Of a stretch of DNA of 64,000 nt, positions 1,527-37,246 are shown in pieces; position 1 is the stretch's first letter; each line of letters begins with the position of its first letter. Made by a program: the position numbers and the translations under genes. The notes below the pieces were generated by a model. The model worked only from the letters and a program-made list of their open reading frames with translations, was not told the DNA's origin and did no database searches. The stretch lies in contig JANJGN010000210.1 in the NCBI GenBank assembly GCA_026770705.1, positions 806,001 through 870,000 on the forward strand. The letters are read 5' to 3'. Source of the stretch: Isurus oxyrinchus. Taxonomy: Eukaryota.

Positions 1527-1826
1527 CGACACCGTCTTCGCCCACTCTCTACAGCCTGGTCTCCTCCTGTCAGCAACACAACCCCGACGGCTCCTTCACC
1601 TACGGCTGTTTGGCAATGGACTACTCCCCAGAAATCACCAGCCTGACCTGGAAGAAAGATGGGCAGCCGATCGCTACTGGATTTAAGACTTACCCGTCGG
1701 TGAGAAACCAGAAGGGAACTTTCACCCTGAGCAGCCAGTTAACCATCACCGAGTCAGATGGAGAATGCAGCAAAATCAAGTGTGAGGTTCGATACAGCGG
1801 CTCAGACAAGAGCATTGAAATGCACT
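1527..1826 (+). CDS. IGHM: IgM heavy chain constant exon CH1
   Basis: ttcccag acceptor and T|gtaagt donor, 300 bp, phase 1. (A)[14 protein letters not shown]...[10 protein letters not shown]...TWKK...SSQLTI...KCEV is a C1-set domain resembling shark C-mu1. Confidence 0.95.
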
Positions 1827-2040
1827 GTAAGTATTGGGGAACCTGTGAGAAACAGAAAGACAGTGATTGACCTGTATAGGGCCTTGGCTGTAACGCATTT
1901 ATAGTGCTCTGCATAGTTCTGATCCCTGGAAATTCCAAGTTCGTGTCCATCGACCGCAAAGAGCCTGTTAAAATATAAGAACTTATTGTATCTGTTATCA
2001 ATTTCTTCTGCAAGAAATGGCTAACCTTTGTTTTTTGAAG

Positions 2041-2355
2041 GTCCTCGTCCTGACTTACCTCCAACTGTTCTCCTCACCGTGAGTTCCAGAGATGAAATCA
2101 CAAGCAAAAAATTTGCAATCGCCGTCTGTTCAATCATCGATTTCCGTCCGAAGCCATTCACCGTGAAGTGGCTGAAAAATGGACAATCCATAAATTCAGG
2201 AATTGTCACCTCTCCCGCCTTTGGAATGAACGGGAACTTCTCGGCGACCAGTCGGCTGCAAGTCTCCGCTGGGGAATGGTTCAGCGACGCAGTCTATACC
2301 TGTCAGGTCACTCACCAAGGGGTCACCCAAAGTCGAAACGCCACCAAGTGTGAGG
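2041..2355 (+). CDS. IGHM: IgM heavy chain constant exon CH2
   Basis: ttttgaag acceptor and G|gtaag donor, 315 bp. PPTVLL...[10 protein letters not shown]...KWLKNG...FSATSRL...EW...YTCQVTH. Confidence 0.95.
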
Positions 2356-2979
2356 GTAAGAAATACAAACCGTGGAAGCAATAGATCATTCTCCACTCCG
2401 GTGTTAATCAAATCAGGAATTTATTGGAGTTAGTAGAAAGCACGAAACAACATCTAATTTACTATCATATAGTTGGTGTTTCATTCCGATGTAAGGGCTG
2501 CATTCGGATTATTCACCATTCAGGATTTGATCACATCACGTCTCTGCACTGACGTCATAGAGTATGTGAGGTGGACTTGATATCAGCTTTACCTTGAGTC
2601 AGCTGATCATATTTGGAGAGGCAGAAGGTATCTGGAACCCTTCACTGGTAACAGCTTCGAGACAGAGTGTTGGAAAGTGCACCCACCCTTTTTATAAAAC
2701 ATATTTCAGTCCTGTATTCCAGGGCCCAGGAATGATACATTTGTATTGGGACTGGGGCAACGCAGATTTATGAGAATGTTACCGGGGCTGAACGACTTAA
2801 ATTATGAGAACAATTTACACAGACCAAGCTGGTTTTCCATTGTGTAAAGAAGATTAAAAACGATAGTTAGAGGTTGATATGTCCCAGGTGATTTATTCTC
2901 CTTCAGGGAGAGAAGACTGAACACTGCTGTCCTGCTTCTGAAGGTGAAACTTTGGTTGATTTTCATTTCTGTCTCACAG

Positions 2980-3291
2980 GCGATCACCAATGCCTCAACG
3001 ATCCCACAATTACTCTATTGCCACCTCCAATAGAACAAGTCTTACTGGAGGCGACCGTGACCTTAACCTGCATCGTTTCTAATGCTCCTTTTGGAGTCCT
3101 CGTGTCCTGGACACAAGAGAAGAAGCCTTTGAAATCAGAGATCGCCGTCCAACCGGGAGAGGATCCCGACAGCGTGGTCAGCAACGTAAACATCTCGACA
3201 CAAGCCTGGCTGAGTGGGGCTGAGTTCTACTGCGTGGTGAGCCATCAGGATCTGCCGACTCCTTTAAGAAGTTCCATCCACAAGGAACCAG
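2980..3291 (+). CDS. IGHM: IgM heavy chain constant exon CH3
   Basis: ctcacag acceptor and G|gtgag donor, 312 bp. [23 protein letters not shown]...SW...[20 protein letters not shown]. Confidence 0.95.
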
Positions 3292-4005
3292 GTGAGCGGT
3301 GAGATTGAAGCAATAAGTTGTTCAATGTGTCTATTTCCAGTGTAAATGTAAGGATCAGTATTTACTATTCAGTGTATTCATGGTCTACTCTGATTAGCAA
3401 TTTCGCCAACGAAACGCCCTGGGCCTGTGGACTTTCAGGAGGAAATTGATAAGTAGATGAATGAACAATGAATTGAAGGCTGTGCCATTGGGTTTAGATG
3501 AAGCAAGATGGGAGGAGCCTGGTGCGAAGCTGAAACACCAACATGGACCAGTTGGGCAGAATGGCCTGTTTCTATGCTGTAAACTTTGAGAAACTTTCTC
3601 GTCCAACCCTATAAGTTCTCAAGGAAAAGGATTGTGCCACCTCTGCTCCGAGCTGGAAAGCCGGACAGATCCCAAACTATTTTATTTATTAATTCATGGG
3701 ATGTGGGCATCGCTGGCTGGGCCAGAGTTATTGCCCATCCCTAATTGCCCTTGACAAGGTGTTGGTGAGCTGCCTTCTTGAACTGCTGCAGTCCATGTGG
3801 TGTAGATACACCCACAGTGCTGTTAGGAAGGGAGTTCCAGAATTTTGATTCAGCTATAGTGAAGGATCGGTGATATATTTCCAAGAAGTGGATAATGAAA
3901 AACCTTAATATTCATCACAAAACACGTTACTCTCACATCTAACCAGTGGTTTCATTGTCTATGAATGTATCCAGTTTATTAACATTTATTGTACATTTTC
4001 TGCAG

Positions 4006-4397
4006 TTAAAGACCCGCGGGAACCGTCCGTGTCTGTCCTCCTGCCCTCGGCAGAACATGTCTCCGCTCAGGGATTCGTCTCCCTCAGCTGCTTAGTGACA
4101 GGTTTCTCCCCGCGAGAGATTTTCGTCAAGTGGACTGTCAATGACAAGCCGGTGAATCCCGGAAACTACAAGAACACCGAGGTAGTGGCGGACAACGGCA
4201 ATCGCTCCTTCTTCATGTACAGCCTGTTATCCATTGCAGCGGAGGAGTGGGCCAGCGGCGCTTCTTACTCCTGTGTGGTGGGACATGAAGCGATCCCCTT
4301 GAAGATCATCAACAGAACGGTTGATAAATCCAGCGGTAAACCGAGTTTTGTGAACATTTCCCTTGCACTGATGGACACCGTTAATTCATGTCAATGA
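4006..4397 (+). CDS. IGHM: IgM heavy chain CH4 plus secretory tailpiece
   Basis: ttctgcag acceptor; EPSVSVLLP...[11 protein letters not shown]...[12 protein letters not shown]...VDKSS. Internal donor G|gtaaa after 4335 for the membrane form. Tail [20 protein letters not shown] has an N-glycosylation site and a penultimate Cys. Confidence 0.96.
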
Positions 4398-4424
4398 GAA
4401 TCTCTCGGTTACATTTCAAACTTC

Positions 4425-4440
4425 AATAAAAAATAATAAA
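4425..4440 (+). terminator. Secretory-form polyadenylation signals
   Basis: AATAAA at 4425-4430 and 4435-4440, just after the tailpiece stop, followed by GT/T-rich sequence. Confidence 0.8.
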
Positions 4441-4845
4441 GTCCTTTTCTCCAATCGTGATTTAAATACACAGTCGTTTAAGTAATGTTGTTTTCCAATT
4501 TTGCTAATTTTAGACGTGTTTTGTTAAAATCGGATACTCACAGGGCTCAGACCCAAGTCTTGTACATCCAGTGCTCCCAGCTCAGATACAACCTGGGTTA
4601 GAGACAGAGTAAAGCTCATTCATTACAGGATTCTGCAAAATAGCTTCACCAGCTCTCCTCCAGCTGAGGAGAAATCTGACAATTTCTCATTTCCAATAAA
4701 CAAACACAGCACATTTAGATCTCGGTGTTCCTGCTTCTCTTGTCTTCCATCCCTTTAAAATGGATGTCAGCTTTAAGCTTCTGCACCACACCCACGGGGA
4801 ACTGAAGTGAGGGTCACGCAGAAATATGTCCCAACAATCCCCCAT

Positions 4846-5355
4846 CAGAGAGAGGGGGAAGGGAAATTGTTACCCCATTGCACCTCCACCTCCCCAACAG
4901 AGAGAGGGGGAGCGGAAATTGCTAACCCACTGTACCCCGACTTCTCCAACAGAGAAAGGGGAGGGGAAATTGTTAACCCAATGTACCCCCACTTCCCCAG
5001 AGAGAGTGGAAGGGGACATTGTTAAACCACTGCACCTTCACTTCCACAACAGCAGGTGGTGGTGGGGGGGAATTGTTTAACCACTGTACCCCCACTTTCC
5101 CAACAGAGAGAGGGGAAGGCAAACTGGTAAACCACTGTACCTCCACTTACCTGAGATAGAAAACTGAAAGGAAAATTTTAAGCCAATTTTATCTCCACTT
5201 GCTAAACAAAAAGACAAGGAAGGCCATTGGTTAACCCGGTGTGTTTCCACCTTCTCAGCAGAGAGAACCGAAAGGGAAATTGCTTAGACAACCAGACAGA
5301 GCAAAACTATTAACTCACTGGACCCTCAGTCCCCTAGTAGAGAATCTGGAAGGGA
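4846..5355. repeat. About 52-bp minisatellite, roughly 9 degenerate copies
   Basis: Unit CAGAGAGAGGGGGAAGGGAAATTGTTAACCCACTGTACCCCCACTTCCCCAA; the first copies start at 4846 and 4898. Confidence 0.85.
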
Positions 5356-5764
5356 ATGGGTCTCTACTATAAGGACTCAGTTAACAACAGTCGAAGTCAG
5401 CTTCTAGCTTACTGGCCACAGATTTTAAACTCCCATCATGCTTGGGATGTTGTAAAAACGTCTACTTATGCAACATAACTTGAAGATGTTTTAACACTCT
5501 TGCCCTGTTAAGCTTATGCTAAGATTGATTTCCCATCATCCAAATCTAAACTGGTGACTGAATCCTCCCTGGGTTGTTCAAGGTTCTGTCCCTGAATTTT
5601 TATGAGGCACATGGTTGATTCTTTGCATTCGTTCATCTGATATCACCTTGCATCTCACAGAAAACATGTTTATACACAGAACTTTGAAAATATTCACCGG
5701 ATTTTTCACCGTCAAGGTCAGACTCGATCATTGGTATCTGGTGAACTTTGGAAAAATAGTAAAA

Positions 5765-6880
5765 ATACACACAGCTGACACAAATTGACAAACAAAAAAC
5801 ACGTCTACACACACACATAGGCACAGACACACTGACACAAACGCACACAGGTACAAGCAGACACATGTACACCAACACATGCGGAACCACACAAAGACAG
5901 ACAGACACACATAGACAAATATACACACACGTGCACACACACGCAGACACACACGCACACAATCACAAACACATGGACACAGATGCACAAACATACACAG
6001 ACACACACGTACACACATAAACAAATACACACGCACAATCACACACATTCATAAACACACACACAATCACACACATACAGAAATACACACACTGACACAC
6101 TCGCTCACACACATATACACAATCACAAACACACACAAACAGATAAAACCAGACAAGCAGACTCATACAAGGATACAAAGCACAAATGTAACTTTTAGCA
6201 TATGCATTATCACACGTTCACAATGAAAGAAATACAGACAGAAAGACACACACGATCGTACACATTAAAACAATGCATGGACATACATTAACACATGCAC
6301 ACACATGAGCAGACAACACCCAGATACAAAAACACAGAGAAACCGACTAACACATTCACAGACACCCATGTGGACACAAACATGAACATACTCATACACA
6401 CTAGAACACAAAAAACACATGTTGGTACATATGAAAACATAAACACGCATTGATACATAGTTCTAAATATCGATCAACACACAAATGCACACATTAAAAA
6501 CCCTATTTCTCTCTCGCTGTGTCATACACACAGACGCTGTGACACAGACATTAATATGCTGACACACAGTGGAATACAAAAAGACACATTAACACTCATA
6601 TTAGCAGGCAGGAACTCGTAAACACACATTAACTCAGATAGTAATAAGTCAACATAGACAACAATACACAAACACGCACAATAACACACTCATACATACA
6701 CATCAGCAGAAAAACCAAATATACATACAGACGCAGACACAAAAATACACAAATCAGCACTCATTAGCACATGAACACACACATTAACACACATGCACAC
6801 CTATGGACACACAAACAACCAGTAATGCAAAGTGCGAGATACTCATGCAGATACACACAAAAGCTAAAGCACAACACAGA
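5765..6880. repeat. Degenerate (CA)n-rich low-complexity tract
   Basis: Long interrupted ACAC runs; source of the spurious Cys/Val ORFs on the minus strand. Confidence 0.9.
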
Positions 6881-7416
6881 GGCCAGGCTATTGAAGAAAG
6901 TATAATTCAAATGTACTTTTCTAACGGGCATATCCTCCGGCAATTGTCTCTATTACATAATAACCCGATAAACACACTGAAACAATGCTCTTACTGAGAA
7001 ACTGATTTAAATTAATGATGCACCAAACATTCCCATCACAAATAGACAAACAAGATGGGAAATCATATCCGAGATTTTAAAAAGCAACGTCCACAGTTTC
7101 CAAATAAGTAGCTCAGTGAATCTCTCCCGATACCCATCATAATATTCTCCAATAATAGATCATACGAAATTGTTCGAAAATAACCTGATACTGGAGAAAA
7201 TTTGCCATATTTTCTGACATGGACTGTACAACGATTGTAAAGGGAGAACAGCTGTGGAGATAGTTACAGAGATGGGTTACTGAGTGTCACTTAATAGTAG
7301 ATATACATTGAACATTCAATACATTAATAACTTATGAAAGAGTAAAGGAAATATTTTTAAAATGATATCCTAGATTAATAAACAATCTAATTATATTTCC
7401 TCATATATCCCCGTAG

Positions 7417-7544
7417 ATTCCACAGACCGCATCTGGATTGAAGACTCTGAGGATGATAACGGCAACATCTGGACAACTGCTTCCACATTCATCATCCTGT
7501 TCTTCCTGAGCATTTTCTACAGCACTGCCGTCACTCTGGCGAAG
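7417..7544 (+). CDS. IGHM: IgM transmembrane exon TM1
   Basis: ccgtag acceptor and AAG|gtgag donor. (D)[42 protein letters not shown] carries the conserved antigen-receptor TM (CART) residues and is in frame with the CH4 internal donor. Absent from the ORF track. Confidence 0.95.
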
Positions 7545-7682
7545 GTGAGAAGATTCAATCCACTCACACTTCAAACTGACAGAAGTGGTTTGAAATATCT
7601 CTCAATGTTTCATTGATTAGAACTCTAACATAATAATTCCAGATTATAAACATCTGCTTCATTATTTCATCCTCTTTTACAG

Positions 7683-7691
7683 ATCAAGTGA
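7683..7691 (+). CDS. IGHM: IgM transmembrane exon TM2 (IK-stop)
   Basis: cttttacag|ATC AAG TGA, giving a K-I-K cytoplasmic tail; AATAAA at 7785-7790 and 8102-8107. Confidence 0.9.
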   Translation: MK

Positions 7692-8277
7692 CCGGTTGAA
7701 TTTTGGACACCGTAGATTTTCCTCAGCTCTTTATTGAGATCTCTGTATTCTGAATTTAAAATATATCCTCTCGGTGACTGTAAAAATAAAATACCTTCAG
7801 TTTATGTTTCCCAATTTGTAACTGAGACAATCATGAACAGTATTTCCGTTTCTCTGTTTCAAATGTGCGAGATAATTGTGAATCATTGTAACAGCAGCTT
7901 ATAATTTCCCACTAGTTTGAATTCCCTGTGTAAATAAGTAACTTTTCTCATTCCTCATTCCCAATTAATCCCTTCCCTTTATATTGAGCTCCTGTTTTCT
8001 CTTTCTGGTGTCTGTTACAGTTGTACACACAGTTGGCAGCTCAGAGTGAATGTGCTCTGTTCTCAATGTGACCCTCAGTCATTATATTCAGTTAACTTTA
8101 AAATAAACTTTTCTGTAAAATGTTCCCTGAAATTGTTAATAAATCATGAATGTGAAACGAACTGACTTTGCTGAACTCCTTTCTCTCAGACCCATCGACA
8201 TCGCTCCATTTTCCCTATTACACAGCTTTCCCCCCTTCTCCCAAGCAGGCATTTTTAACCAGTCTTGTCTGGGATCT

Positions 8278-8380: not shown

Positions 8381-9330
8381 GAGATCCTTCAGTGAAAGAG
8401 TCACCGCGCCACCAAGCGACCCATCGGTGTTAATACACCTTTACCTCTGCCTTTTTATGGCAAATTCCAGAGGCAAAATGATTGCACGGCGAGGAGAATC
8501 TCGGTGATTTCACTCATACTCAGGCCTCTCACAGTCACATGTCAGGTAATTGTAAACAGCAGGGATCAGCTTAATCCGAGGTCCATATAGGACAGTATAT
8601 GGAGGATGAAAGTTTCCTTTACACTGTCCCATTAATCACTCCCAGCGTCGGTGCAGCAGGGTTTAGATAGAGAGAAAAAGTTTTTTTCCCCTCTTTATCC
8701 TTTCATGAGATATGGTGTCGCTGGCAAGGCTGCTCTGAACAGTTCACCTTCCGAGGCCATTTCAGAGGGCAGTTAACTGTCAACCGCATTGCTGTGGACC
8801 TGGAATCAGATGTCGGCCACGCCAGATGAAGATGACAGATTTCCTCCCCGAAAGGACTTGAGTGCAGCAGATGGGTTTTTACGAAAATCGGTGATAGTTG
8901 TCATGGTCACCATCACTGAGGCCAGTTTTCAATTCCAGATTTTATTAATTGAACTCACATTCCAGCAGCTGCCATGTTGGGATTTGAAGCCCAGCCCTGA
9001 GAGCATTCGCCTGGACTCTCTCTACCTTGTCCGATTAAACACTCACAAGGCAGAGTCGTCACAGGCCGCCTTCTCAAGTCTATTAGGGATGTGCAATAAA
9101 TGCTGGCCCAGACAGACACGCCCACATCGCATAAACGAATAACAAAAAATACGTATATACCACACACAGTACAGTTGATACAAACCATTGAATGATTCCT
9201 AGAGACTAGGGCCGATCGAAGAGCAATTCTGCAAATTATTACCACAGTTTGGGGCTTATCAGGGACACCACGGAGCACAAATCTTGGAAATTCCCAGGCA
9301 CTGCGGCCTGCCTGATGCAACAAACAACTG

Positions 9331-9758
9331 AACTCACTAAGCATCTCCCCAGGGATCCTCTCTTCCTGTTCCATTCCGTCTGATACCATCCTCCTGAATT
9401 CACTGAGCATCACCCCAGGGGTCCTCTCTCCCTGCTCCATTCCCTCTGACACCATCCTCCTGAACATCACCCCAGGGGTCCTCTAACCCTGCTCCATTCC
9501 CTCTGACACCATCCTCCTGAACATCACTCCAGAGATCCTCTCTTCCTCCTCCATTACCATCCTCCTGAACTCACTGAGCATCACCCCAGAGATTCTCTCT
9601 CCCGGCTCCATTCCCTCTGATACCATCCTCCTGAACTCATTGAACATCACCCCAGGGATCTTCCCTTCCTGCTCCATTCCTTCCATTACCATCCTCCTGA
9701 CCTCTCTGAACATCACCCCAGGGATCCTCCCTTCCTGCTCCATTCCCTCTGATACCAG
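9331..9758. repeat. Tandem repeat, about 66-bp unit with shorter variants, about 7 copies
   Basis: Unit AACTCACTGAGCATCACCCCAGGGATCCTCTCTTCCTGCTCCATTCCCTCTGATACCATCCTCCTG. Confidence 0.9.
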
Positions 9759-11270: not shown

Positions 11271-11310
11271 TGAATCAGAAATTGGTTTCTGGTTGTGATA
11301 TTTTGCACGA

Positions 11311-11939: not shown

Positions 11940-12529
11940 TGTGAACATACGAATTAGGAGCAGGACTGGGCCACTCGGCCCTTCAAGCCTTTTCCACCAT
12001 TTTATAAGATCATGGCTAACCTTTCAGCCCCTTGTTATATCTACCTATCTCTGCCTTAAAAAGATTCAAAGACTCTGCTTCCACTGCCTTTTGAAGGAGA
12101 GAGTTACAAATACTCACGATGCTCTGAGAGAAAAATAATTCTCTCATCTCTGTCTTAAATGAGTGAACTCCTATTTTTAAACAGTGACACCTAGTTCCAG
12201 ATTCTCCCACAAGAGGAAAGATCCTCTTCACACCCACCCTGTCAAAACTCCTCAGGATCTGAAAGATTCCGATCAAGTCGCCTCTTAGTTTTCTAAATTC
12301 CAGCGGATACAGGCCTAGCCTGTCCACCCTTTCCTCATAAGACAGCCCGCCTATCTGTGATATTAGTCCAGTAAGCCTTCCCTGAATGACTTCTAACGCA
12401 TTTACATCTTTCCTTAAATAAGGAGGCCAACACTTTCCACAGCACTCCAGATATGGTCACACCGGTGTCCTGTACAACTGAACCATAACCTTCTTACTTC
12501 AATTCCCCTCACAGTGAATGATAACGTTC
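11940..12529 (-). mobile_element. CR1-type LINE fragment, interrupted by a Penelope-like insertion
   Basis: DRLGLYPLEFRKLRGDLI...RIFPLVGESGTR...EMRELFFSQ. Confidence 0.85.
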
Positions 12530-13432: not shown

Positions 13433-14356
13433 AATCCTAATTACTTGTTGTGCCTAAATAGTTCCGCTTTTTTATCAATTTCTTTCAGACCTCCTGAATA
13501 GCTTTGCACATCTGGAAACTATTCTCTCATGTTTCAGCCCTGTTACCCTGACGTGTCTAAATCTCTTCACAGCCGATTTACTCCTCTGTATCCTCCTCAC
13601 AGCTTACATTTCCACCATTTACATCAGCTAAGTTTTGTCTACATGCGCCAGCAAGTGTCGAACTCAGCACCTGGTTTGGTAAGTCCACTGTTTTAACCAC
13701 TGGGTTGCCCCAAGGAGGTAAATGTCCTCTTGCAACTTTTAAAACTACTATTATTCTCTGTACCACTTACCATGAAGATACATAACTAAAGTGAGTAAAG
13801 TTTACAATGGTAAAAATGCGTTTACCCCCCTCAGGGAACTAAATCATATTGACACATGCAGATGAACATACACAGACATGGACACCGATAGTGACAGCTG
13901 CCTAAGGAAAGAAAGATATCCAGAAAGCAAGGATGTCACCAGACTGGCTCCGTTTTTGTTCCATTTCCAACTGCAAATTTGGTGAATGCCTGCGGATGAA
14001 CGGAAATGAAAAATACTGGGAAGCGTTTGAAATTTTTTTTAATAGATAATTAATTCTGTGACTCATTCTTAAAGCAGGAACAATGAGAAATGTAAACTAC
14101 TAAATGTAGTTTGCAGGTTCAATATGCAGGATTTGAAACTGTATCAGGAAACATAAAATGGTTTCAAGCCCATTACATAAGCAACTCAGCTCCGTCCATT
14201 GCTGCCATCTACCTTTTAATGCGACAAAGTGGTTACAGCTGAGAATGAAGACATGTAGCCCCATCTATTCCTGGCTGCCCTGCAATTTCTGCTGTCTCTC
14301 CTCGATTTTTCCTCCAGAATGGAGCACTGCACACTGAACGTGCACAGGAACACACA

Positions 14357-14722
14357 TGTGATTGAGGTGTATAAAATTATATGGGGCATAGGTAGGGTAG
14401 ACAGGAAGGAACTTTTCCCCTTAGTGGAGGGATCAATAACCAGGGGGCGTAGATTTAAGATAAGGGATGGAAGGTTTAGAGGTGATGTTTTCACCCAGAG
14501 GGTCGTGGGAATCTGGAACTCACTGTCTGAAAGGGTGGTAGAGGCAGAAACCCTCATAACATTAAAGAAGCATTTGGATGTACACTTGCGACGCCATGGT
14601 ATACAAGGCAATGGGCCTAGTGCTGGAAAATGGGTTTAGAATAGTTAGGCACTTGTTTGACGGGCGCAGACTCGATGGGCCGAAGGGCCTTTTTCTGTGC
14701 TATGGGCCCCAATGACTCTATA
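14357..14722 (+). mobile_element. CR1-type LINE 3' end
   Basis: IEVYKII...VDRKELFPLVEGSITRG...FTQRVVGIWNSL, followed by a typical 3' UTR. Confidence 0.85.
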
Positions 14723-22774: not shown

Positions 22775-23985
22775 GATAAAGGGGAGCCTGTAGACATACT
22801 GTACTTGGATTTCCAGAAGGCATTTGATAAGATGCCACATCAAAGGTTATCGCGACAAATAAAAGCTCATGGTGTAGGATGTAACATGTTAGTGTGGATA
22901 GAATATTGACTGGCTGGCAGAAAACAGAGAGTATGCATAAATTGGTCTTTGTCTTATTGGCAGAATGTAATGAGTGGAGTCCCACAGGATCCGTGCTGGC
23001 ACCTCAACTTTTTACAATTGATATCAATGACTTAGATGAGGGGAGAGAAGCCATTGTAGCTAAATTTGCAGATGACATGAAGATATGTAGAAATGTATGT
23101 TGTGAAGAGGACATAAGGAGGTTGCAGACGCATATAGATAGGCTGACTGATTGGGCAGAGATCTGGCAAATGGAGTTTAATGTTGGAAAATGTGAAGTTG
23201 TTCACTTTAGCAGGAAGAATAAAAAAATAGAGTGTTACTTAAATGGAGAATGACTGCAGAATTCCAAGGTGAAGAGGGATCTAGGTGTTCTAGTGCATGA
23301 GGCACAAAAAGTTAGTATGCAGGTATAGCAAGTAGTTAAGAAGGCTAAGGGAATACTTTTCTTTATTACGAGAGGAATTGAACATCAAAGCAAGGATGTT
23401 ATGCTTCAGTTATACAGGGCATTGGTGAGACCACATATCAAATACAGTGTGCAGTTTTTAGTCTCCTTATTCAAAAAAAGATGTAAATACATTGGAGGTG
23501 GTTCAAAGGAGGTTTACTAGATTGCTACCTGAATGAGCGGGTTGTCTTTTGAGGATAGGTTGGACAGGTTAGGCTTGTTTCCACTGGAGTTTAGAAAAGG
23601 GAGGGGTGACTTGATTGAAGTATATAAGATCCTGAATGGTCTTGACAAGGTGGATATGCAAAGGATGTTTCCTCTTGTGGGTGAGTCCAAAACTAGGGGC
23701 ATTGTTTTGAAATTAGGAGGCACCCTTTTAGGACAGAGGTGAGGAGAATTTTTTTCTCCGAGGACTCTGGAACTCCCTGCCTCAGAAGTCAGTGGTGGTG
23801 GAGTCATTAAATATTTTTAAGGCAGAGGTAGATAGATTCTTGTTAGGCACAGGAATCAAAGTTTATCGGGGGTAGATGGGAATGTGGAATTTGAAATGCA
23901 AGTAATCAGTCATGATTATATTGAATGGCGGCGTGGGCTCAAGGGGCTGAATGACCTAGTTATTTTCCTATTTTGCATGTTCGCA
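22775..23985 (+). mobile_element. CR1-type LINE RT fragment nested in an L2 fragment
   Basis: YLDFQKAFD, GSVLAPQLFTIDINDLDEG...KFADDMK...WQMEFNVGKCEV and DRLGLFPLEFR, with stops and frameshifts. Confidence 0.9.
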
Positions 23986-26080: not shown

Positions 26081-27928
26081 ATTTTTTATTCATTCCTGGG
26101 ATGTGGGTGTCAGTGGCTGCAGCCAGCAGTTACTGGCCATTCCTAAGTGCCCTTGTTCAGAGGGCAGTTCAGGATCATCACATTACTGTGGGGTCTGGGG
26201 TCACAGATAGGCCAGACCAGGTAAGGATTTTTATAACTATCAACAATGGTTTCATGGTCATCTTTAGCCTTTTAATTCTGGATTTTTATTGAATTCAAAT
26301 TTCACCATCTGCTGTGGTGGGGATTGATCCCAGAGGCCACAGCATTACTCTGGGTCTCTTGAATATGAGTACGTCACAATGCCACTATGCCACCACAATG
26401 GGCACATGTAGGGGGCAATGTTTTAATGACTGGGAGGAGCTTGTTACCCATTGTTCAAAATGATGACAACTTGTCCATCAAGCTGTATTAACCTTTGAGC
26501 TGATCAATAATGTCTTATTGATGAGGCAAAGCAGCAGCAGAGAAGGCAAGAAAAGGAAGAAAATCCTGCTCTCCTGATCTCACTACCTCATAGACGACCT
26601 GCCCCATGTGTCCAAAGATCTGTGTGTCTGTTCAGTCACATGAAGACCAATGGCAAAAACTCACAACCCTGAGTAGACATCACCCTCTAATCGAGGGACT
26701 GCTGACGACAATGAGGGACAATGTGCAGAGGACGCATGTGAGGTCAATCTGGACCAGGAAGGAGGAGGAGAGAATGTTGTGAATTTCTATGCTGGGATGG
26801 ATTTTGGAAACTCCTTTTACAGGGGGTTAGAAGGGGAGGATTTATGCACAGCAAACTCAAAGCAAGAAAATATTTGTCTCCTCTGAATTTCCATCCTGGA
26901 CTGATAGTGATTGTTTCTATAAACTCATGGGGTACTGGAAGCAGAGGTCTTTTTTAAGGAGTATCTTAAAGGAGGAAAGGAAGATAGAGAGGCAGACAGG
27001 ATTAGTAATGAAATCTCAGATTTTATGGCCTTGGCAGCTACAGGTACCAAATGTGGAGCAAATGAAATCAGGAATTGTCAGGAAGTCAGAAGTGGAGGAG
27101 TGCAGATATCTCAGAGGTAACAAAGGAATGGATGATGGTTTCAGCAGCAAATGGGCTGAGACTTGGGTGGAGTCTGGTGATGTTACTAGTCTTCATGATG
27201 ATGCAGGTATGTGGTTGGAGCTTGTCTTGGGGTCAAATATGACACCAATGTTTTGAAGGATCTCCTTCAGCCTCAGGCAGTTGACAGAGAGGGGGCTGGA
27301 GTCAGTGCCTAGGGAATGAAGTTTGTAGTGGGGACTGAGGACAATGTCTTCAGCCTTCTCAATATTTAAATGGAGGAAAATTCTCCTCATCCACTGCTGG
27401 GTGTTGGGCAGGTCAGGATGGTGTGTGACTTGGAGGGGAACCTGGAGGTGATGGTGTTCACATACACCCGCTACCCTGGTCCTTCTAGGTGGTGGAGATT
27501 GAGGATTCATGAGATTCTGTTAAAGTTCTGGTCGATTTGCACAAAATTAAATAATATTCCTCTCCTCTGATTCTGCTCCCAGCTTCTTTCACTCTTCTCC
27601 CCCCATATTCCAGAGTCTTGTGTAGGACGAGACTGGGTGGCATGTTTCCTGAAGCATATTAGTGAACCAGCTGGGGTTTTACGACAATCCAGCAGTTTTC
27701 ATGGTCATATTTTCCTAGTGTCAGCCCCACAAATCGCCAGATTCATTCAGCTCAATTTCACAATCTGCCTTTGTGTTTTTGTGGGGTCTCTTTTTTCTGT
27801 TTTAAATTATTTTGATAGGTTTTTAGAAGGGGAGGTTTTCGAATCCGGAAACTCAAACCAAGCATCACATCAGGATCTGACAGAGTCATCCAATTTATCA
27901 TAATCTTAAACATCATCAGATTTTGAAC

Positions 27929-28713
27929 ATGGAAGGAGAAAGCACCATTCACAGCAGAGAGAAACCGCACACGTGCCCTGTGTGTGGACGAGGCTTCAGC
28001 CGATCATATGGCCTGTCGAAACACAAGTGCAGTCATGCAGGGGAGAAACCATGGAAATGTGGAGACTGTGGGAAGGGATTCAGATCCTTTTCTGAGTTGG
28101 ATACTCATTAACGCACTCACACTGGGGAGAAGCCGTTCATCTGCTCCATATGTGGGAAGGGATTCATTTGGTCAGCAAACCTGCTGACACACCAGCATGT
28201 TCACACTGGGGAGAGACCGTTCACCTGCTCCGAGTGTGGGAAGGGATTCACTCATTTATCGTCCCTGCTGAGACACCAGCGAGTTCACACTGGAGAGAGG
28301 CCATTCACATGCTCTGCGTGTGGGAAAGGATTCACTGATGCATCCAACCTGTTGAGACACCAGCAAGTTCATACTGACAAGAGACTTTTTAAATGCCCAG
28401 ACTGTGGGAAGTGCTTTAAAAGTTCTGGGGTCTGATGTCGCATCAGCATGTTCACACTGATGAGAGACCTTTTAATTGTCCAGAATGTGGGAAATGCTAT
28501 AAAAGGTTCTGGGAACTAATGTTCCATCAACGTGTTCACACTGACAAGAGACCGTTCAGGTGCTCTCACTGTGGGACTGGGTTCAGGAGATCACCTGAAC
28601 TCACTGTACACCAGCGAGTTCACACTGGGGAGAGACTGTTCACCTGCCCCGAGTGTGGGAAGAGATTCACACGGTCATCCATCCTGATGAGACACCAGCA
28701 AGTTCACAACTAA
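27929..28713 (+). pseudogene. C2H2 zinc-finger pseudogene, 9 fingers
   Basis: [23 protein letters not shown]... with TGEKP/TGERP linkers; in-frame TAA at 28109-28111 and a frameshift near 28430. Confidence 0.92.
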
Positions 28714-28715
28714 CT

Positions 28716-30274: not shown

Positions 30275-30585
30275 ATCTGAGCGATGGAGATTCTGTTACT
30301 CAGCGCGAATCCTCGCTCACACAGGCAGAGCGAGAAGATGTCGCTTTAACCTGCATCTTTACTGGCGATGGTTATTACTTATCCTGGTGCTGTCAATACC
30401 CAGACAGACAGCCCGAGTTTGCACTCCAGAGACACATGGGCGGTGATTCTGAATTTAAGGCGGATTTTGCTTAGAGCCGGTTTTCTGATACATTCCAGCA
30501 GACAGACAGATTGTACCGATTGACCTTCTCGGAGCTGCGGCTGTCTGACACCGCAGTATATTACTGTGCACTGAGTCTCATAGCG
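30275..30585 (+). pseudogene. TCR V alpha/delta pseudogene (V exon and degenerate heptamer)
   Basis: ttccag|(D)LSDGDSVTQRESSLTQAEREDVALTCIFTGDGYYLSWCCQYPDRQPEFALQRH...ADFA*SRFS...LTFSELRLSDTAVYYCALS. TAG at 30472; heptamer CATAGCG at 30579-30585; no nonamer or leader found. Confidence 0.9.
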
Positions 30586-31062
30586 ATTGTTCCTCGTTCA
30601 ATAACTGCTGCAGCTTTCTGGGTTACAGCTTCTCTCTGTTGAGGGCTGTTTACCACAGCGGGTCAGACACTGTCACGTGAATCCATTCCTACTAGCAATA
30701 AAACAAGCACAAGAACAAGTACAACAAAAACTGCATCTGAAATCGGTCCCTTTGATTGCTGACCCTCTTCCCGATGATTGCATTAACGTTATGGGGGCTG
30801 AATTGGCTGCTCGCCATTCCCCATTTCCCAAAACTATCTCCAGACCCTTTCCTGGAACCGTTCTACTAGTTTAGCTTCAGAGGCAGTTCGTGGCAAACAG
30901 AAAAGGAATAATTGTTCTGAAACATCAGTCTGCAGTGGAAACAGCAGTACTCCAAGCTATAAGGGCGTAATAATTATATGAACCAGTAAATGTTCCTAAA
31001 TGTAAAAGAAATTTGGACATATTAAAACAGAGCATGTGTAATCTGAGCAGTTCCTGAAAGTG

Positions 31063-31078
31063 TGCTGCCATCTTGCGG
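31063..31078 (-). promoter_or_regulatory. CTCF-like site 1
   Basis: TGCTGCCATCTTGCGG, reverse complement CCGCAAGATGGCAGCA. Confidence 0.55.
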
Positions 31079-31503
31079 GAGAAATCAGAATTGTCCCCGT
31101 CATTGTTTCCTTCAGTTCAGAGAACTGTTGTTCAGGAATTATCTTCCGAAGACACTCAAAGGGCACAAATCCCTACGGCAATCCTCATAAGCGCCATCTA
31201 ATTACGTTCATGTTGAACAATGGCTCTCTCTTTGATGATTGCATGAACGGAATGAGGGCAGAATTGGCTGCTCCTTATTCCCATTAAGAAAACACACTCC
31301 CACCCGCTTTCCTGGTGCCAGTTCAGTTGGTTTCCCGCTTCTTCTGACATGGCTGCAATAATTGGTTGTTTCTACCGGCCTGCAGGGGAAGCAGAAGTCC
31401 GCCAGCTCGAGACGATTCGAATAATTTGATGAGCCTGTTTAAATGTCCCTCAGTGTTAAAGACTTTCGGACATATTGAAAAGAATTATCCGTTTCTGAGG
31501 TGT

Positions 31504-31519
31504 TGCTGCCACCTGGTGG
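31504..31519 (-). promoter_or_regulatory. CTCF-like site 2
   Basis: TGCTGCCACCTGGTGG, reverse complement CCACCAGGTGGCAGCA, matching the CTCF core consensus. Confidence 0.7.
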
Positions 31520-32423
31520 AAGCAATCAGAATGCCGCCGGCAATATTTTCTTCAATTCAGAGCGACTGCTTAGGAGTAATATTTCTAGGAGACTCAAAAG
31601 GTAAGTAAGATCGATTGTTGTAATTCTATATCGTGATATTACTATAGTTGCTGCACTAGGGTGTACCTCTTTTTATATCACATTACACTGAGTGGTCAGC
31701 ATTGATTGTTGCCTGAATATACAATGTGTGAAGGCGTAAGTTTGGTGAGTGAGGGTGTTCAGTGAAGATACAAATTAATTAATCAAAATAAATGTAATTC
31801 GCTCAATAAAGATGGCAGGAGAGGTGATGTGTCTCGGCTGCAGCATGTGTGAGCTACTGGCTTGCACTGCAATCCATGGCAACCACATAAGACCATAAGA
31901 CTTAGGAGCAGAAGTAGGCCATTCGGCCCATCGAGTCTAGGTCCGCCATTCAGTGAGATCATGGCTATTCTGATAATCCTCAACTCCACTTTCCTGTCTT
32001 TCCACTATCACCCATGATTCACTTACTTACTGTATTTCTCAACCTTGGATATATTTAACGACCTAGCCTCTTTGGTAAACAATTCCACAGATTGACGACC
32101 CTCTGAGAGAATAGATTCCTCCTCATCTCTATTTTAAGTGGGGGGCCCCATTACTCTGCGATTATGCCCACCCCCACCCCCACCCTCCCCCCTCCCCCCC
32201 CCCATCCCACGTCCTAGGAAACCCTGTGCCACTCTGCGTAACATCTGTCGCTTGTAAAATGCTAGAGTCAATTATTAAGGAAGTAGTAACAACCTAACTA
32301 GTGTCTTACAAATGTTCAACATGACCTCATTACTCTTTTCCACAATGCCCCTATTAATAAAGCCTAAGATACTATGCTTTATTAACTGCTCTCTCAACAT
32401 GCTGTGCCATCTTCAATAGCTTA

Positions 32424-32460
<37 letters not shown>

Positions 32461-33315
32461 GCAGGTTCCTTTGTGCCTGCATCTCCTTTAGAGTTTGTCC
32501 CTTTATTTTATACTATTTCTCCATATTCTTTCGGCCAAAATGAATTGCATCACACTTCTGTGGCATTGAACTTCTTCTGGCAAACCACCCATGTCTCTAT
32601 GTCCTTCTGAAGTTCAAATCTATCCCAAACAAAATTCACAAAGCTTCCAATCTTTGTATTATCTGCTAGTCTTGGAATCTATCTCAGAACAGCACAATCT
32701 AGTTTCTTACATCCAGGTCACCATAAGAAGACAAGTGTTATTCGTGGGAGCGTTGCTGAGCTGGAAGTCAGTGAATAGAAGCAGCTCGAGCTGCGCTGCA
32801 GCCAGTGTCCTCATTGTGGGAATAGTTCAGCTGCTAGAGACCGGGGTTGGGCATAAGAGTCCGGTACGTTCATTAGGGACTGTCTCGATGTCCTGGGCCC
32901 ACATCCCACATTTAACAAACACCACCCAATACGAACTCATGCACCGACCTCCCGGTTCATCACTGTGGGGTAAGGAGGGCGGCAGCACAACTGGCAGAAA
33001 GAAAAAACTCCCTACCCCCCAGCCCTGTACAACAGAGTATTGTGGGAGGGGATTTCACATCCGGATCACAATCCCAATGTAGAGTCAGAAAATTGCAGCC
33101 TCCTTTTATAAACCTGTCTCTTATTCACAAAACATTTAGCCAGCGACCCGAGAACGTGCGGCCCATCAATGATCTCAGCTAATCTGCCCTTTGTAAATCA
33201 ACTCGATCCCCTAAGGTGTTTCAGTCCAGCCCTGAAGTCCGGTCTCCCAGGGCAGTCCAGGGCTGCAGTCTCCAGCTCCCCGTCACATAAACCCCCAGCT
33301 CTAGGCAGCAGAGCG

Positions 33316-33358
33316 ATGGGAATCCTCCTTGTTTTCACCCTGTGTGTCTGTATACCCT
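33316..33358 (+). CDS. Leader exon of the NAR-TCR V
   Basis: MGILLVFTLCVCIP followed by T|gtgagt; phase 1, in frame with the V exon. Confidence 0.9.
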
Positions 33359-33506
33359 GTGAGTACCGATCAAACAAACCGACATTGTGTGGGTTTAATA
33401 TAAAGCTGCTTGAGTCCATCCCAATTACAGACAATGTCTGCGGGTTTAACCCCGCTCCGTGGTTCGGCTCTGATGGTCCATTACACTCTCTCTGTTTAAT
33501 TTCCAG

Positions 33507-33794
33507 GCTCTTTCAGTCAGTCAGTGACACAGACCCCAGCAGCGGTGACCAGGAAGGAGTGTCAGTCTCTCACCATCACCTGTGTTTATTATGGTTATTA
33601 TTATTTACAAAATGGACATTTCTTCAAACAAACCCAGACCGGGACAGAGTGGGAGCGGATCTCCAGCGGGGAGAGATTTGTTGTGTCGGTGAATAAAGCA
33701 GGAAAGACATTTTCACTGGAAATTCGGGACGTGAGAGTTGAAGACACCGCCAACTATTACTGTAAAGCTCAGTACAGATACAACATTGGTTAAT
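33507..33794 (+). CDS. NAR-TCR variable segment (IgNAR-like V)
   Basis: ttccag acceptor. SQSVTQTPAAVTRKECQSLTITCVYYGYYYLQNGHFFKQTQTGTEWERISSGERFVVSVNKAGKTFSLEIRDVRVEDTANYYCKAQYRYNIG*. Short V lacking the CDR2 region as in IgNAR, with an extra FR1 Cys and a YYCKA ending. Confidence 0.9.
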
Positions 33795-33822
33795 CACAGA
33801 GGAAAAGGCCTGAACAAATAGC
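33795..33822 (+). other. RSS of the NAR-TCR V, best read as 12-spacer
   Basis: CACAGAG + gaaaaggcctga (12) + ACAAATAGC (7/9 match to ACAAAAACC). A 23-spacer reading gives TGTACAATT. Confidence 0.65.
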
Positions 33823-34136
33823 TCTGTACAATTAAAATATATATTCTCCGGGCCCAGATAGTGAATTGTCGGGTTGATGTTATCATCGCTGGAATCTGAT
33901 TACGTTTTATTGTAATTTCCACCATTCCATTATCTTTCTTTGATATTTGTCTCGGTTTATATGAAGCGAACATCTCGTTCCCTGGACCAGTTACTCAGCG
34001 CTCAGGGCCTCACAAAGCACAGTGTCAGCCGGCAGACATTTTGAAACATTGAATATTGTTTATTTTTTTCAATCCGCTGAAAATATGGCAGTTTCTACTG
34101 TCTGGTGATGATTTCCCGCCAGGTTGAGTTGTCGGT

Positions 34137-34175
34137 GGTTCTTGTGCCGGGGAGACTGATAGCAGTGTTACTGTG
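34137..34175 (-). other. 23-spacer RSS 5' of the NAR-TCR J
   Basis: GGTTCTTGT + 23 nt + TACTGTG on the + strand. Confidence 0.9.
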
Positions 34176-34228
34176 GTGGAAATATGATTCTGTAGATGGA
34201 TCTGGTACGATGTTGACTGTCATAGCCG
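34176..34228 (+). CDS. NAR-TCR joining segment
   Basis: WKYDSVDGSGTMLTVIA + G|gtaagt; NAR-type DGxGT motif; phase-1 donor compatible with the supporting V acceptor. Confidence 0.9.
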
Positions 34229-36843
34229 GTAAGTGACTCCAGCCACCATCCCCCTCACACCTGTTGCGACCTGTCCTAGCTAATGTTCACCCGCTGCTTT
34301 TTATTGTGATCAGTGTCAGTTCAGTCCCACGAAAAGGAAAACAGATGGTTTTCATAAGGAAACCTCTCTGTTGGCTTTTTCGATTTGGGGGCAGAATATT
34401 ATTCAGGAGCCGGGTCGAATGTCTAGGTGAAACTATGTCTGAGATCTGTCAGACTAGGCGATCAACGGGATCAGGGTGGGTGGAGGATGGAGTGTGGGGA
34501 CGTGAGGAAGGGGATTTTAAGTTTGGAGGAGCATGAGGGTTCGCTGCATCTGAACCATTATTAGTTTCACTGGTACATCGGGGACAATCAATCCCTCTGA
34601 TTCACAATCCTAATCATTTGTAAGTTTGGAATTGCTAACATTTATCTCTTTTGAATGTAGATTTTTGAGATACTGGATTGCTTTAATTTATCTGTATCTG
34701 TGATTTCTGCAAATTAAAACAACACAGAGCAGTGGGAGAGTGAGGATGATGCACTAAACTGCTAGAAGGGAACAGGAACATAAGAGAACAATGATAATCG
34801 AAACCAAGAGAAAGGTTGGATGATTTCTGGGGGCCGTTCAAAATTCTTCCTGGCACGAGGGTGGGGGGTGAGGTTTATGGAGGGACAGGCTGCAATGGGT
34901 CCAGTCTGGAATGCTAGGTAAACGCTTGGCCTCTTTGTTAGGGAAAGATCTAAATCCTTTGGAGTGAGTGCAACAAAGTTTCATCAGACTGATTGCTGAG
35001 ATAAAGTCTTACGAGAAGACATTGAGTTGTCTGGGTCTATATTGCCCCGGATTTCGAGGAATTGAGATGTAATCTCATTTGAAACATGTAATATGGAAGA
35101 CAGGGCAGATTCCCGGTGGATGTTTCCCAAGGCTGGTAAGTCTATAACTATGGGTCAAAGTTTCAGAATAAACATTCGGCCATTAGAACTCAGAAGAGGA
35201 GAAGTCAAACCATTGTTGTGAGTCTGTACCTCAGAGAGCTTTGGATACTCAGTGCTGACTGTACTTAGGACGGTATTCGATAGATCTTTGGATACTAAAA
35301 GAATGAAGGGATATGGGGGCACTGCTGTAATGTGATTTTGAGGATGGAGATCAGCGACGATGTTATTGAATGGCAGAGCAGGTTTGAAAGGTGCTATAGC
35401 GGCCTTTCCATCTCTTTGTTAGGTTCTCTGCTTTGATTTCTTACATTCCTGAGAAATGCAATCAGCAACAATCCACGTCTCTCTAGAACAATTGAACAGG
35501 CTGGGCCACTTTTCATTGTAAAAGAGGAAACCGAGGAGATATCAGAGAAACCTTTTAATTATGAATGTGTTCAATCGGGTGGATGTGGAGCAACTGGTAA
35601 TTTGTGGCTGAGTCCAGAGCAATAGGAGATTATTATAAGGTAGCCACTAATTGAACATAAAAGGCATTAAGAAAAATACATTTGCATGAACACATGTCAG
35701 AATGTGGAACTGGAGGTCACATGGAGTGGCTGGAGCAGAGAGCATTGATAGATTTATGGGAAGACTTCAAAATACAAGAGGAAGAGCGGAATAAACAGGC
35801 AGAAGGATGTGGACCGAATTGGTCATTTAGATTTCGGGCAGGAAGGGCTGGTTTGGAGTGTAAACATAGGCATCAATCAATTAGGCCGAATGGCCTGTTC
35901 CTCTTCTGCAGATTGTGTATAATGTAAAACCTTCGAGAATACTCCGCTCAGAGAACCAGGGACAGAATCAGTCAATGAGCGGAAAGAATTGAAATTGTCA
36001 GAGAGCCGGAAGAGACAGCTCCCAGTGAGTAACAGGGAAACCACTGCGGACACTGAACAGACTGATCCCAACCGACAAATGAGAAAGATTGGGACAAGTT
36101 CCCACGATTGCAAAAAGCGCAAACAGCACATTAACGTAAAATAAAGTGAGAGTAACTGTAAATATTTCAAATTAAAAGGACACGGAGAAATTTGGGCCCT
36201 CATGTTAGATGAATATAGAGAAACAGATCAAAAAGTTGATAGAAACTCCCGAGCAGTGGTCAACTCCAGCAAATGATTAACCTTTGACCACCTATGTTCA
36301 CTATCGGTTTGGCCCAATCAGTGCTGATGAATCTCATCAAGTTATTATGGATCTTGCTTTGATGCTAAACAGTTCGGTTAGTCTCGGGCAATCATTTTGG
36401 AAACTGATTGCTTCGCTGATAATAAAATGTTCCTTCTGGAAAAATAGAAACAGAAATGTAATATACATTACATGCTGCACTGCAGTTGAAATCCGGTCCA
36501 TCCTGTCGGTGCTGCCCCTCTAAAAATGCAACCCAATTATCCCCACTACTCTCTTTCCCCGTAGCCCTGTGTTTTTCCATGTTCCAACATTTATCCATTA
36601 CTCGTTTGGAAAACACCCTTAACCAGTTTCACCGTCTGTTCAGACAATGCATGCCAAATAGTAAGAACTCGCTCTGAAACACAAAATAATACCTCATCCT
36701 TTCACTGCTTCATATTTCAATAACAGTGAATGAAGTTAAAGCAGGTTATAAATTAAACAAACTCACCCAAAACCACAGCATCTACTGCGATTAACAAGTT
36801 TCCCAGTCTCTAAATAGATTAAGATCAAATTTTTCTCCTGCAG

Positions 36844-37149
36844 ATTCCAGTTCCATTGTATCCCAGAATCCGCCTGTCCAAACCTCTGCTGTGGGTGACA
36901 CCGTTTCTTTAAGCTGTGAGTATTCAGGTGTCTGTCAGTACACAGTACACTGGTACCGTCAGTCCCCAGGACAGGCTCCGGATTACTTGCTTCAGAGACA
37001 TGCTTCAGGAGAAGAGGATAAAGAAAACACTGTTGGGGGGAGAAGTTCTGCTTCTATCGATCCTGCCGAGAAAATCAGCCGGTTAAATATCTCCAAACTA
37101 CAACTGAGCGATTCCGCTGGGTATTACTGTGCACTGAGTCAGCGCACAG
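36844..37149 (+). CDS. Leaderless supporting TCR V delta of NAR-TCR
   Basis: ctcctgcag|(D)SSSIVSQNPPVQTSAVGDTVSLSCEYSGVCQYTVHWYRQSPGQAPDYLLQRH...LNISKLQLSDSAGYYCALSQRT. Open frame, non-canonical Cys in CDR1, no leader exon found nearby. Confidence 0.92.
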
Positions 37150-37188
37150 CACAGTGATACAGAGCACGGAGGGTGCCATACAAAAACC
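37150..37188 (+). other. Consensus 23-RSS of the supporting V delta
   Basis: CACAGTG + 23 nt + ACAAAAACC. Confidence 0.95.
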
Positions 37189-37207
37189 TGAACATGGAGG
37201 GATTAGA

Positions 37208-37246
37208 CACAGTGATAAAGAGCAGGGAGAGAGCTGTACAAAACCT
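37208..37246 (+). other. Second, tandemly duplicated 23-RSS
   Basis: CACAGTG + 23 nt + ACAAAACCT, 58 bp after the first, with homologous spacer and flank. Confidence 0.85.

What the first reader, a model, noticed from the sequence alone, without database searches (positions are those of the whole stretch)
1527..37246. Intact IgM constant region in cis with, and co-oriented to, a NAR-TCR cassette and TCR V segments
Seen: all six C-mu exons are open with canonical splice sites and both poly(A) regions. They end about 26 kb upstream of a NAR-TCR leader/V/J/supporting-V unit on the same strand, with TCR V pseudogenes around it. Established: shark IgH genes are organised as mini-clusters; IgH V segments are found rearranged to TCR delta in sharks, and Ig-derived segments or partial clusters have been reported inside the shark TCR alpha/delta locus. 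Inference: this may be a fully functional B-cell IgM cluster inside or abutting the TCR alpha/delta V array. Its upstream VH could then serve both antibody and, by cis deletion across C-mu, chimeric VH-TCR delta chains, making one locus shared by B and T cells.
Basis: partly seen in the sequence, partly recalled or inferred. Interest (0 to 1): 0.85.

Follow-up and report, generated by a model that had tools for sequence, protein, structure and literature searches.

The report
Shark IgM gene beside NAR-TCR cassette
An intact shark IgM antibody constant-region gene lies 26 kb upstream of, and facing the same way as, an intact two-V-domain T-cell-receptor (NAR-TCR) cassette among dead T-cell-receptor V genes; the sequence is real, but a 2025 paper already described this mixed antibody and T-cell-receptor neighbourhood in sharks.

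Summary
All six C-mu exons (CH1-CH4, TM1, TM2; 1527-7691, + strand) are open. They have AG/GT splice sites, consistent phases, the internal CH4 donor for the membrane form, a mu tailpiece and both poly(A) regions. An intact NAR-TCR unit starts 25.6 kb downstream on the same strand: split leader, NAR-type V, J with a splice donor, and a leaderless supporting V with a perfect 23-RSS. Five other TCR-type V segments in the window are all pseudogenes, three of them inverted. The window has no N.

VH/D/JH upstream and D/J/C delta downstream lie outside the window. Use of the VH by both B and T cells is untested.

The arrangement is already published. Flajnik et al. [quoted passage not shown] This scan also noted the same kind of thing on another piece of this genome (s1-864177). 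Interest is low to moderate.

The parts
1527..1826 (+). C-mu exon CH1 (300 nt, phase 1 in and out)
   Evidence: AG acceptor and GTAAGT donor. Pfam C1-set E 2.7e-12. N-terminal Cys (SSC) plus the intradomain Cys pair.
2041..2355 (+). C-mu exon CH2 (315 nt)
   Evidence: AG acceptor and GTAAGA donor. C1-set E 6.5e-17.
2980..3291 (+). C-mu exon CH3 (312 nt)
   Evidence: AG acceptor and GTGAGC donor. C1-set E 1.1e-8.
4006..4397 (+). C-mu exon CH4 with the secretory tailpiece ([20 protein letters not shown]-stop). The internal donor G|GTAAAC after 4335 gives the membrane form.
   Evidence: C1-set E 1.3e-21. Aligns over residues 5-128 to IgM Fc chains in the PDB. 82% identical to a Chiloscyllium punctatum protein and 63% to Callorhinchus IgH, with a near-identical tailpiece.
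4425..4440 (+). Two AATAAA signals for the secreted mRNA
7417..7544 (+). TM1 exon (128 nt; ...[27 protein letters not shown])
   Evidence: AG acceptor and GTGAGA donor. Matches the membrane IgM (isoform 2) TM segment in the PDB, E 1e-8.
7683..7691 (+). TM2 exon (Ile-Lys-stop). AATAAA follows at 7785, 8102 and 8138.
30283..30578 (+). TCR-type V pseudogene (in-frame stop, WCCQ in place of WYRQ, no RSS)
   Evidence: 38% identical to the supporting V. Weak V-set match.
33316..33358 (+). NAR-TCR leader exon (ATG, 43 nt, GTGAGT donor, phase 1)
33507..33794 (+). NAR-type V exon. It is open, carries an extra Cys (KECQ), and has a long 3' coding end with a TAA 4 nt before the heptamer.
   Evidence: Best PDB matches are shark VNAR domains, E 1.6e-17. 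V-set. About 80% identical relatives in other assemblies, including C. punctatum.
33795..33822 (+). 12-RSS of the NAR V (CACAGAG, 12-nt spacer, ACAAATAGC)
34137..34228 (+). NAR-TCR J: 23-RSS at 34137-34175, then coding 34176-34228 (WKYDSVDGSGTMLTVIA), followed by a GTAAGT donor in phase 1
36844..37149 (+). Leaderless supporting TCR V exon. Its AG acceptor is in phase with the J donor. It has an extra Cys in CDR1 (SGVCQY) and ends YYCALSQRT.
   Evidence: V-set E 7e-16.
37150..37246 (+). Consensus 23-RSS (CACAGTG, 23-nt spacer, ACAAAAACC) at 37150-37188, and a duplicate RSS at 37208-37246 (58-nt tandem repeat)
40520..40740 (-). V pseudogene, inverted, with several stops
47646..47966 (-). V pseudogene, inverted: frameshift, stop and lost second Cys. 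It keeps a 23-RSS-like site at 47684-47646.
49500..49812 (-). V pseudogene, inverted, frameshifted
59270..59630 (+). V pseudogene (several stops) with a weak 23-RSS at 59592-59630

Best explanation
This is the constant-region half of an ordinary shark IgM mini-cluster. It lies inside the elasmobranch antigen-receptor complex (AgRC), the chromosomal region where IgH mini-clusters and the TCR alpha/delta locus are interleaved.

The six C-mu exons would be used in B cells in the usual way. A VDJ joined upstream splices to CH1. Cleavage at the first poly(A) region gives secreted IgM with its tailpiece. Splicing from the internal CH4 donor to TM1 and TM2 gives the B-cell receptor.

The NAR-TCR cassette 25.6 kb downstream is a separate T-cell unit. 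Its NAR V joins its own J (a 12/23 pair, with no D in between). The J splices in frame to the leaderless supporting V. That V must itself rearrange, through its 23-RSS, to D/J delta further downstream.

The adjacency reflects the shared origin and continuing linkage of these loci. It would geometrically allow an upstream VH (23-RSS) to join a downstream D delta by deletion, but that step is not shown here.

Shown: the gene structures, their orientation and their spacing. Inferred: expression, the presence of VH-D-D-JH upstream and of D/J/C delta downstream, and any cross-use.
For: - Exon structure, splice sites, phases and poly(A) signals.
- C1-set domains in all four CH exons.
- The CH4 tailpiece and TM1 match IgM chains in the PDB.
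- CH4 and its tailpiece are conserved against other chondrichthyan IgH proteins.
- The NAR V is closest to VNAR structures.
- The RSS grammar and the in-phase splice from J to the supporting V.
- No N in the window and only diverged interspersed repeats.
- The intervening DNA holds LINE reverse-transcriptase and zinc-finger fragments and no other Ig gene.
- Two small runs of the same organism, guessed to be RNA, hold 0.26 and 0.24 of the sampled 31-mers of 1520-7519. The exonic share of that stretch is 0.2475. Runs of about 95 million letters cannot hold a quarter of a single-copy locus as genomic DNA.
- Flajnik et al. 2025 (PMC12227049) report this kind of IgH and TCR alpha/delta interleaving in four elasmobranchs.
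Against: - No JH or VH lies within the 1526 bases upstream, and the flanks could not be fetched.
- Earlier notes of this scan describe 'headless' IgM clusters in this genome (s1-863583), so a VH cannot be assumed.
Transcription and splicing of this copy, as opposed to a near-identical paralogue, are therefore not shown.
- All ordinary TCR V segments nearby are dead and three are inverted. This may be a decayed fringe, not the working V array.
- The delta-type assignment of the supporting V rests on context, not on a named homologue (searches were uninformative).
Confidence: 0.75

Rival explanations
1. Dual-use cluster. The VH of this IgM cluster is used for IgM in B cells. In T cells it is joined in cis to D delta, which deletes its own D-J-C-mu and the NAR-TCR cassette and gives VH-TCR delta chains.
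For: C-mu and the NAR-TCR supporting V are co-oriented, so a deletional join is geometrically possible. As summarised in PMC12227049 and PMC5931798, IgM and IgW V segments are found rearranged to TCR delta D-J-C in nurse shark, and close linkage is said to support this.
Against: The VH was not seen and D/J/C delta was not seen. No chimeric transcript was examined. Nothing singles out this cluster among the many IgH clusters and constant-less VH units noted in the region.
Confidence: 0.15
2. Orphan or headless constant gene. The C-mu exons are intact, but the cluster has lost VH/D (or JH). It therefore makes no heavy chain and is a young relic among decayed TCR segments.
For: No JH lies in bases 1-1526. 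Unchecked earlier notes describe headless and constant-less IgM units elsewhere in this genome. The neighbouring TCR V segments are all pseudogenes.
Against: All six exons, every splice site, both poly(A) regions and the tailpiece are perfectly kept. Probable RNA runs hold the full exonic share of words. An unchecked note places a typical JH-C-mu intron repeat about 1 kb upstream (s1-868809).
Confidence: 0.12
3. Assembly artefact. The IgM gene and the NAR-TCR cassette are joined by a misassembly through interspersed repeats and are not neighbours in the animal.
For: The 8-30 kb interval is rich in LINE and other repeats. No read-level check of contiguity was possible.
Against: The window has no N. 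The repeats in it are only 60-95% alike and short, 400 nt or less. The same kind of neighbourhood is reported in four independent elasmobranch assemblies and was noted on another piece of this genome.
Confidence: 0.04

Closest known systems
Elasmobranch antigen-receptor complex (AgRC): IgM, IgW and IgNAR mini-clusters linked to TCR alpha/delta (Flajnik et al., Sci Adv 2025, PMC12227049)
   Same: An IgM cluster lies in cis with TCR-type V exons and a NAR-TCR V. TCR-type V exons are found beside or between IgH clusters. The proximity is proposed to underlie VH-to-TCR-delta rearrangement.
   Different: This report gives base-level anatomy of one junction: an intact C-mu 25.6 kb from, and co-oriented with, an intact NAR-TCR cassette, with all plain V segments dead. 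The paper's table S1 could not be read, so I cannot say whether this very cluster is listed. PSMB5 synteny was not tested.
NAR-TCR, the doubly rearranging TCR delta chain (Criscitiello, Saltis and Flajnik, PNAS 2006; as summarised in PMC5931798 and PMC12227049)
   Same: A NAR-type V with its own J, followed by a leaderless supporting TCR V that needs a second rearrangement. Each V domain carries one extra Cys.
   Different: No D lies between the NAR V (12-RSS) and J (23-RSS). The V coding end is unusually long. The supporting V has a duplicated RSS. The original paper was not held, so the comparison with nurse shark gene structure is from memory.
Shark IgM mini-cluster (VH-D1-D2-JH-C-mu; established knowledge, reviewed in PMC4279169)
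   Same: Four CH exons, a mu tailpiece, TM1 and TM2, and an internal CH4 donor.
   Different: Only the constant half is visible. The V-D-D-J part lies outside the window.
IgHV and TAILV use by TCR delta in nurse shark (Criscitiello 2010; Deiss 2019; cited in PMC12227049)
   Same: Physical closeness of Ig and TCR delta elements is the proposed basis for chimeric chains.
   Different: Those reports concern V segments and transcripts. Here a full C-mu lies between the presumed VH and the TCR elements, and no chimeric transcript was examined.

Membership tests
IgM heavy-chain constant gene | Four C1-set Ig domain exons joined in phase 1 | tested here: met
   Pfam C1-set matches all four exons. Exon lengths are 300, 315, 312 and 330/392 nt, with AG/GT sites.
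IgM heavy-chain constant gene | Mu-type secretory tailpiece with an N-glycosylation site and a penultimate Cys | tested here: met
   [20 protein letters not shown] aligns with IgM Fc chains through residue 128 and with other chondrichthyan IgH proteins.
IgM heavy-chain constant gene | Internal CH4 donor plus TM1 and TM2 exons encoding the conserved membrane anchor | tested here: met
   G|GTAAAC follows 4335. TM1 at 7417-7544 matches membrane IgM, E 1e-8. TM2 encodes IK-stop.
IgM heavy-chain constant gene | Preceded by VH-D-D-JH of the same mini-cluster | not testable with these tools
   No JH lies in bases 1-1526. There is only an unchecked note of a JH-C-mu intron repeat upstream.
IgM heavy-chain constant gene | Transcribed and spliced in B-cell tissues | tested here: inconclusive
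NAR-TCR cassette | N-terminal V of the IgNAR type with a split leader | tested here: met
   The best PDB matches are VNARs, E 1.6e-17. The leader is at 33316-33358 and the V exon acceptor at 33505-33506.
NAR-TCR cassette | Its own J with an RSS and a splice donor | tested here: met
   23-RSS at 34137-34175, coding DGSGTMLTVIA, GTAAGT donor.
NAR-TCR cassette | Leaderless supporting TCR V with an acceptor in phase with J and its own RSS | tested here: met
   The exon starts at 36844 after an AG. Phase 1 gives the codon G+AT. A perfect 23-RSS lies at 37150-37188.
NAR-TCR cassette | Extra Cys in each V domain for an inter-domain bridge (feature recalled from the 2006 paper) | tested here: met
   KECQ in the NAR V and SGVCQY in the supporting V. 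That the two Cys pair with each other is inferred.
NAR-TCR cassette | D/J/C delta downstream, and expression as a three-domain delta chain | not testable with these tools
   No J-like or C-like element lies in 37-64 kb. No reads were laid.
AgRC (IgH and TCR alpha/delta linkage group) | An IgH cluster and TCR alpha/delta-type V exons on one contiguous stretch | tested here: met
   C-mu at 1.5-7.7 kb and V segments at 30-59 kb, with no N.
AgRC (IgH and TCR alpha/delta linkage group) | Synteny with PSMB5, C alpha/C delta and the other IgH isotypes | not testable with these tools
   All lie outside the window.

The most novel reading that the evidence does not exclude
This particular IgM cluster is a true shared B/T locus. 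Its germline VH is used with C-mu in B cells. In thymocytes it is joined in cis to D delta by a deletion that removes C-mu and the NAR-TCR cassette. One identifiable VH gene would then feed both the antibody and the TCR delta repertoires.
Probability: 0.12. Interest if true: 0.55.

Novelty: already known. Interest (0 to 1): 0.27.

Why it matters
[quoted passage not shown] That arrangement is thought to explain chimeric VH-TCR delta chains and the origin of NAR-TCR and IgNAR. Because the arrangement was published in 2025, the value here is as an annotated test locus. Its unique C-mu, NAR V and supporting V sequences could be followed in spleen and thymus RNA, to ask directly whether a VH next to a working C-mu is also used by T cells.

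Tried and rejected
Run names are coded, and 'catshark' comes only from unchecked earlier notes.
- The search for homologous proteins on the supporting V gave nothing. This means little, because that tool is limited by length and shared words.
- The Atlas and PDB searches placed the supporting V only in the V-set, not in a chain type. Multi-V constructs dominate the PDB ranking.
- Deiss 2019, Criscitiello 2006 and 2010 and Ott 2021 are not held. Table S1 of PMC12227049 is not held either.
- I looked for a D segment and for an extra germline-joined NAR V exon between the NAR V, J and supporting V, as earlier notes report for other cassettes. None was found.
- I looked for JH, other J segments and C-type exons elsewhere in the window. 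None was found.
- I did not build a joined (spliced) C-mu or NAR-TCR model.


Full report
**Observation**

The window has no N. On the + strand I read six exons of an IgM constant gene, and a script confirmed them:
- CH1 1527-1826
- CH2 2041-2355
- CH3 2980-3291
- CH4 4006-4397
- TM1 7417-7544
- TM2 7683-7691

Each exon follows a polypyrimidine tract and an AG. The donors are GTAAGT, GTAAGA, GTGAGC and GTGAGA. Exon lengths of 300, 315 and 312 nt keep phase 1 throughout. The secreted reading frame ends at TGA 4395-4397. The conserved internal donor G|GTAAAC after 4335 leaves phase 1 for TM1 (128 nt, ending in phase 0), and TM2 encodes Ile-Lys-stop. AATAAA signals lie at 4425 and 4435 for the secreted form, and at 7785, 8102 and 8138 for the membrane form.

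All four CH exons match Pfam C1-set, with E from 1e-8 to 1e-21. CH4 with its tailpiece ([20 protein letters not shown]) aligns over residues 5-128 with IgM Fc chains in the PDB. It is 82% identical to a Chiloscyllium punctatum protein and 63% identical to Callorhinchus IgH, and the tailpiece is almost unchanged. TM1 matches the membrane segment of human membrane IgM at E 1e-8.

**The NAR-TCR cassette**

The leader ATG lies 25,625 bases after TM2, on the same strand. The parts are:
- a leader exon, 33316-33358
- a V exon, 33507-33794, whose best solved relatives are shark VNAR domains (E 1.6e-17)
- a 12-RSS, 33795-33822
- a J with a 23-RSS (34137-34175) and coding sequence 34176-34228 (…DGSGTMLTVIA), ending in a GTAAGT donor in phase 1
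- a leaderless V exon, 36844-37149, whose AG acceptor continues that phase (G+AT)
- a perfect consensus 23-RSS, 37150-37188, with a second copy at 37208-37246 inside a 58-nt tandem duplication

Each V domain has one extra Cys (KECQ and SGVCQY). I found no D segment and no additional germline-joined NAR V exon inside the cassette. This is the doubly rearranging NAR-TCR architecture as summarised in PMC5931798 and PMC12227049.

**Other V segments and the intervening DNA**

Five further V-set segments are present, at 30.3 kb (+), 40.6 kb (-), 47.8 kb (-), 49.6 kb (-) and 59.4 kb (+). All are broken by stops or frameshifts, and most lack a usable RSS. Three face the opposite way.

The 26 kb between C-mu and the cassette holds LINE reverse-transcriptase fragments, other interspersed repeats and a broken C2H2 zinc-finger array at 27.9-28.7 kb. 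Repeats within 8-64 kb are 400 nt or shorter and 60-95% alike. Nothing in the sequence points to a misjoin, but contiguity was not tested with reads.

**Expression**

The look-up of sequencing runs on 1520-7519 listed two small runs of the window's probable organism (X15 and X16, 93-98 million letters, guessed to be RNA). They hold 0.26 and 0.24 of the sampled 31-mers. The exonic share of that stretch is 0.2475.

Runs of that size cannot hold a quarter of a single-copy locus as genomic DNA, and exact 31-mers tolerate little divergence. This therefore suggests transcripts identical or nearly identical to this C-mu.

**What could not be seen**

Unchecked notes of this scan add three things:
- A typical JH-C-mu intron repeat lies about 1 kb upstream (s1-868809).
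- NAR-TCR or TCR delta-type elements lie on the same piece 91, 346 and 381 kb upstream. If true, the IgM gene lies inside such an array, not at its edge.
- 'Headless' IgM clusters exist elsewhere in this genome. A VH therefore cannot be assumed here.

**Comparison with what is known**

Flajnik et al. 2025 (Sci Adv, PMC12227049) examined chromosome-level assemblies of great white shark, a catshark, epaulette shark and a stingray. They report the following:
- Some TCR alpha/delta-type V exons lie between the IgH clusters.
- NAR-TCR V genes lie in the same map.
- The proximity readily supports VH-to-TCR-delta-D rearrangement and the origin of NAR-TCR and TAILV.

This scan had also already noted 'a complete IgM constant gene directly abutting a NAR-TCR / TCR alpha-delta V array' on another piece of the same genome, and its follow-up reached the same paper (s1-864177).

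**Verdict**

An intact, probably expressed C-mu lies in cis with and co-oriented to an intact NAR-TCR cassette. A complete cluster, a downstream C delta and dual B/T use are not shown.

The most likely reading (0.75) is an ordinary IgM mini-cluster and an ordinary NAR-TCR cassette lying side by side in the AgRC, each used by its own lineage. The rivals are dual use of the VH (0.15), a headless relic (0.12) and an assembly artefact (0.04).

Novelty: already known as a kind of arrangement. Whether this very cluster is listed in the paper's table S1 could not be checked. Interest: 0.27.

Noticed in passing
window 33507-34228: The NAR V has a 12-RSS and its J a 23-RSS, with no D between them. The V coding end runs 10 codons past the second Cys and holds a TAA 4 nt before the heptamer, so it may be a germline V-D fusion. 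This is the subject of another note (s1-863567).
   Followed up: partly
window 37150-37262: The supporting V's 23-RSS is duplicated by a 58-nt tandem repeat (85% match). The first copy is a perfect consensus. The second has a perfect heptamer and a weaker nonamer.
   Followed up: partly
window 27923-28713: An array of about seven 84-nt C2H2 zinc-finger units on the + strand, split over several reading frames (Pfam zf-C2H2, E 1e-15). It is probably a zinc-finger pseudogene lying between the IgM gene and the TCR V segments.
   Followed up: partly
window 47646-47966, 49500-49812, 59270-59630: Three dead V segments are 36-44% identical to each other and so belong to one family. Two are inverted relative to the NAR-TCR cassette and one is co-oriented with it, which suggests local inversions or duplications in a decaying V array.
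   Followed up: partly
window 4840-5148 and 9328-9757: Tandem repeats with units of 51/103/154 nt lie in the CH4-TM1 intron, and repeats of 66 nt lie just downstream of the membrane poly(A) region. Their meaning is unknown.
   Followed up: no
   Followed up: no
window 380-750, 12016-12327, 14319-14639, 22894-23253, 56993-57238, 60932-61486: Many fragments of one LINE-like element family occur on both strands (C-terminal ORF motif ...ALE.VQRRFTRM.PG...; RVT_1 match at 22.9 kb). One of them lies inside the JH-C-mu intron just upstream of CH1.
   Followed up: partly
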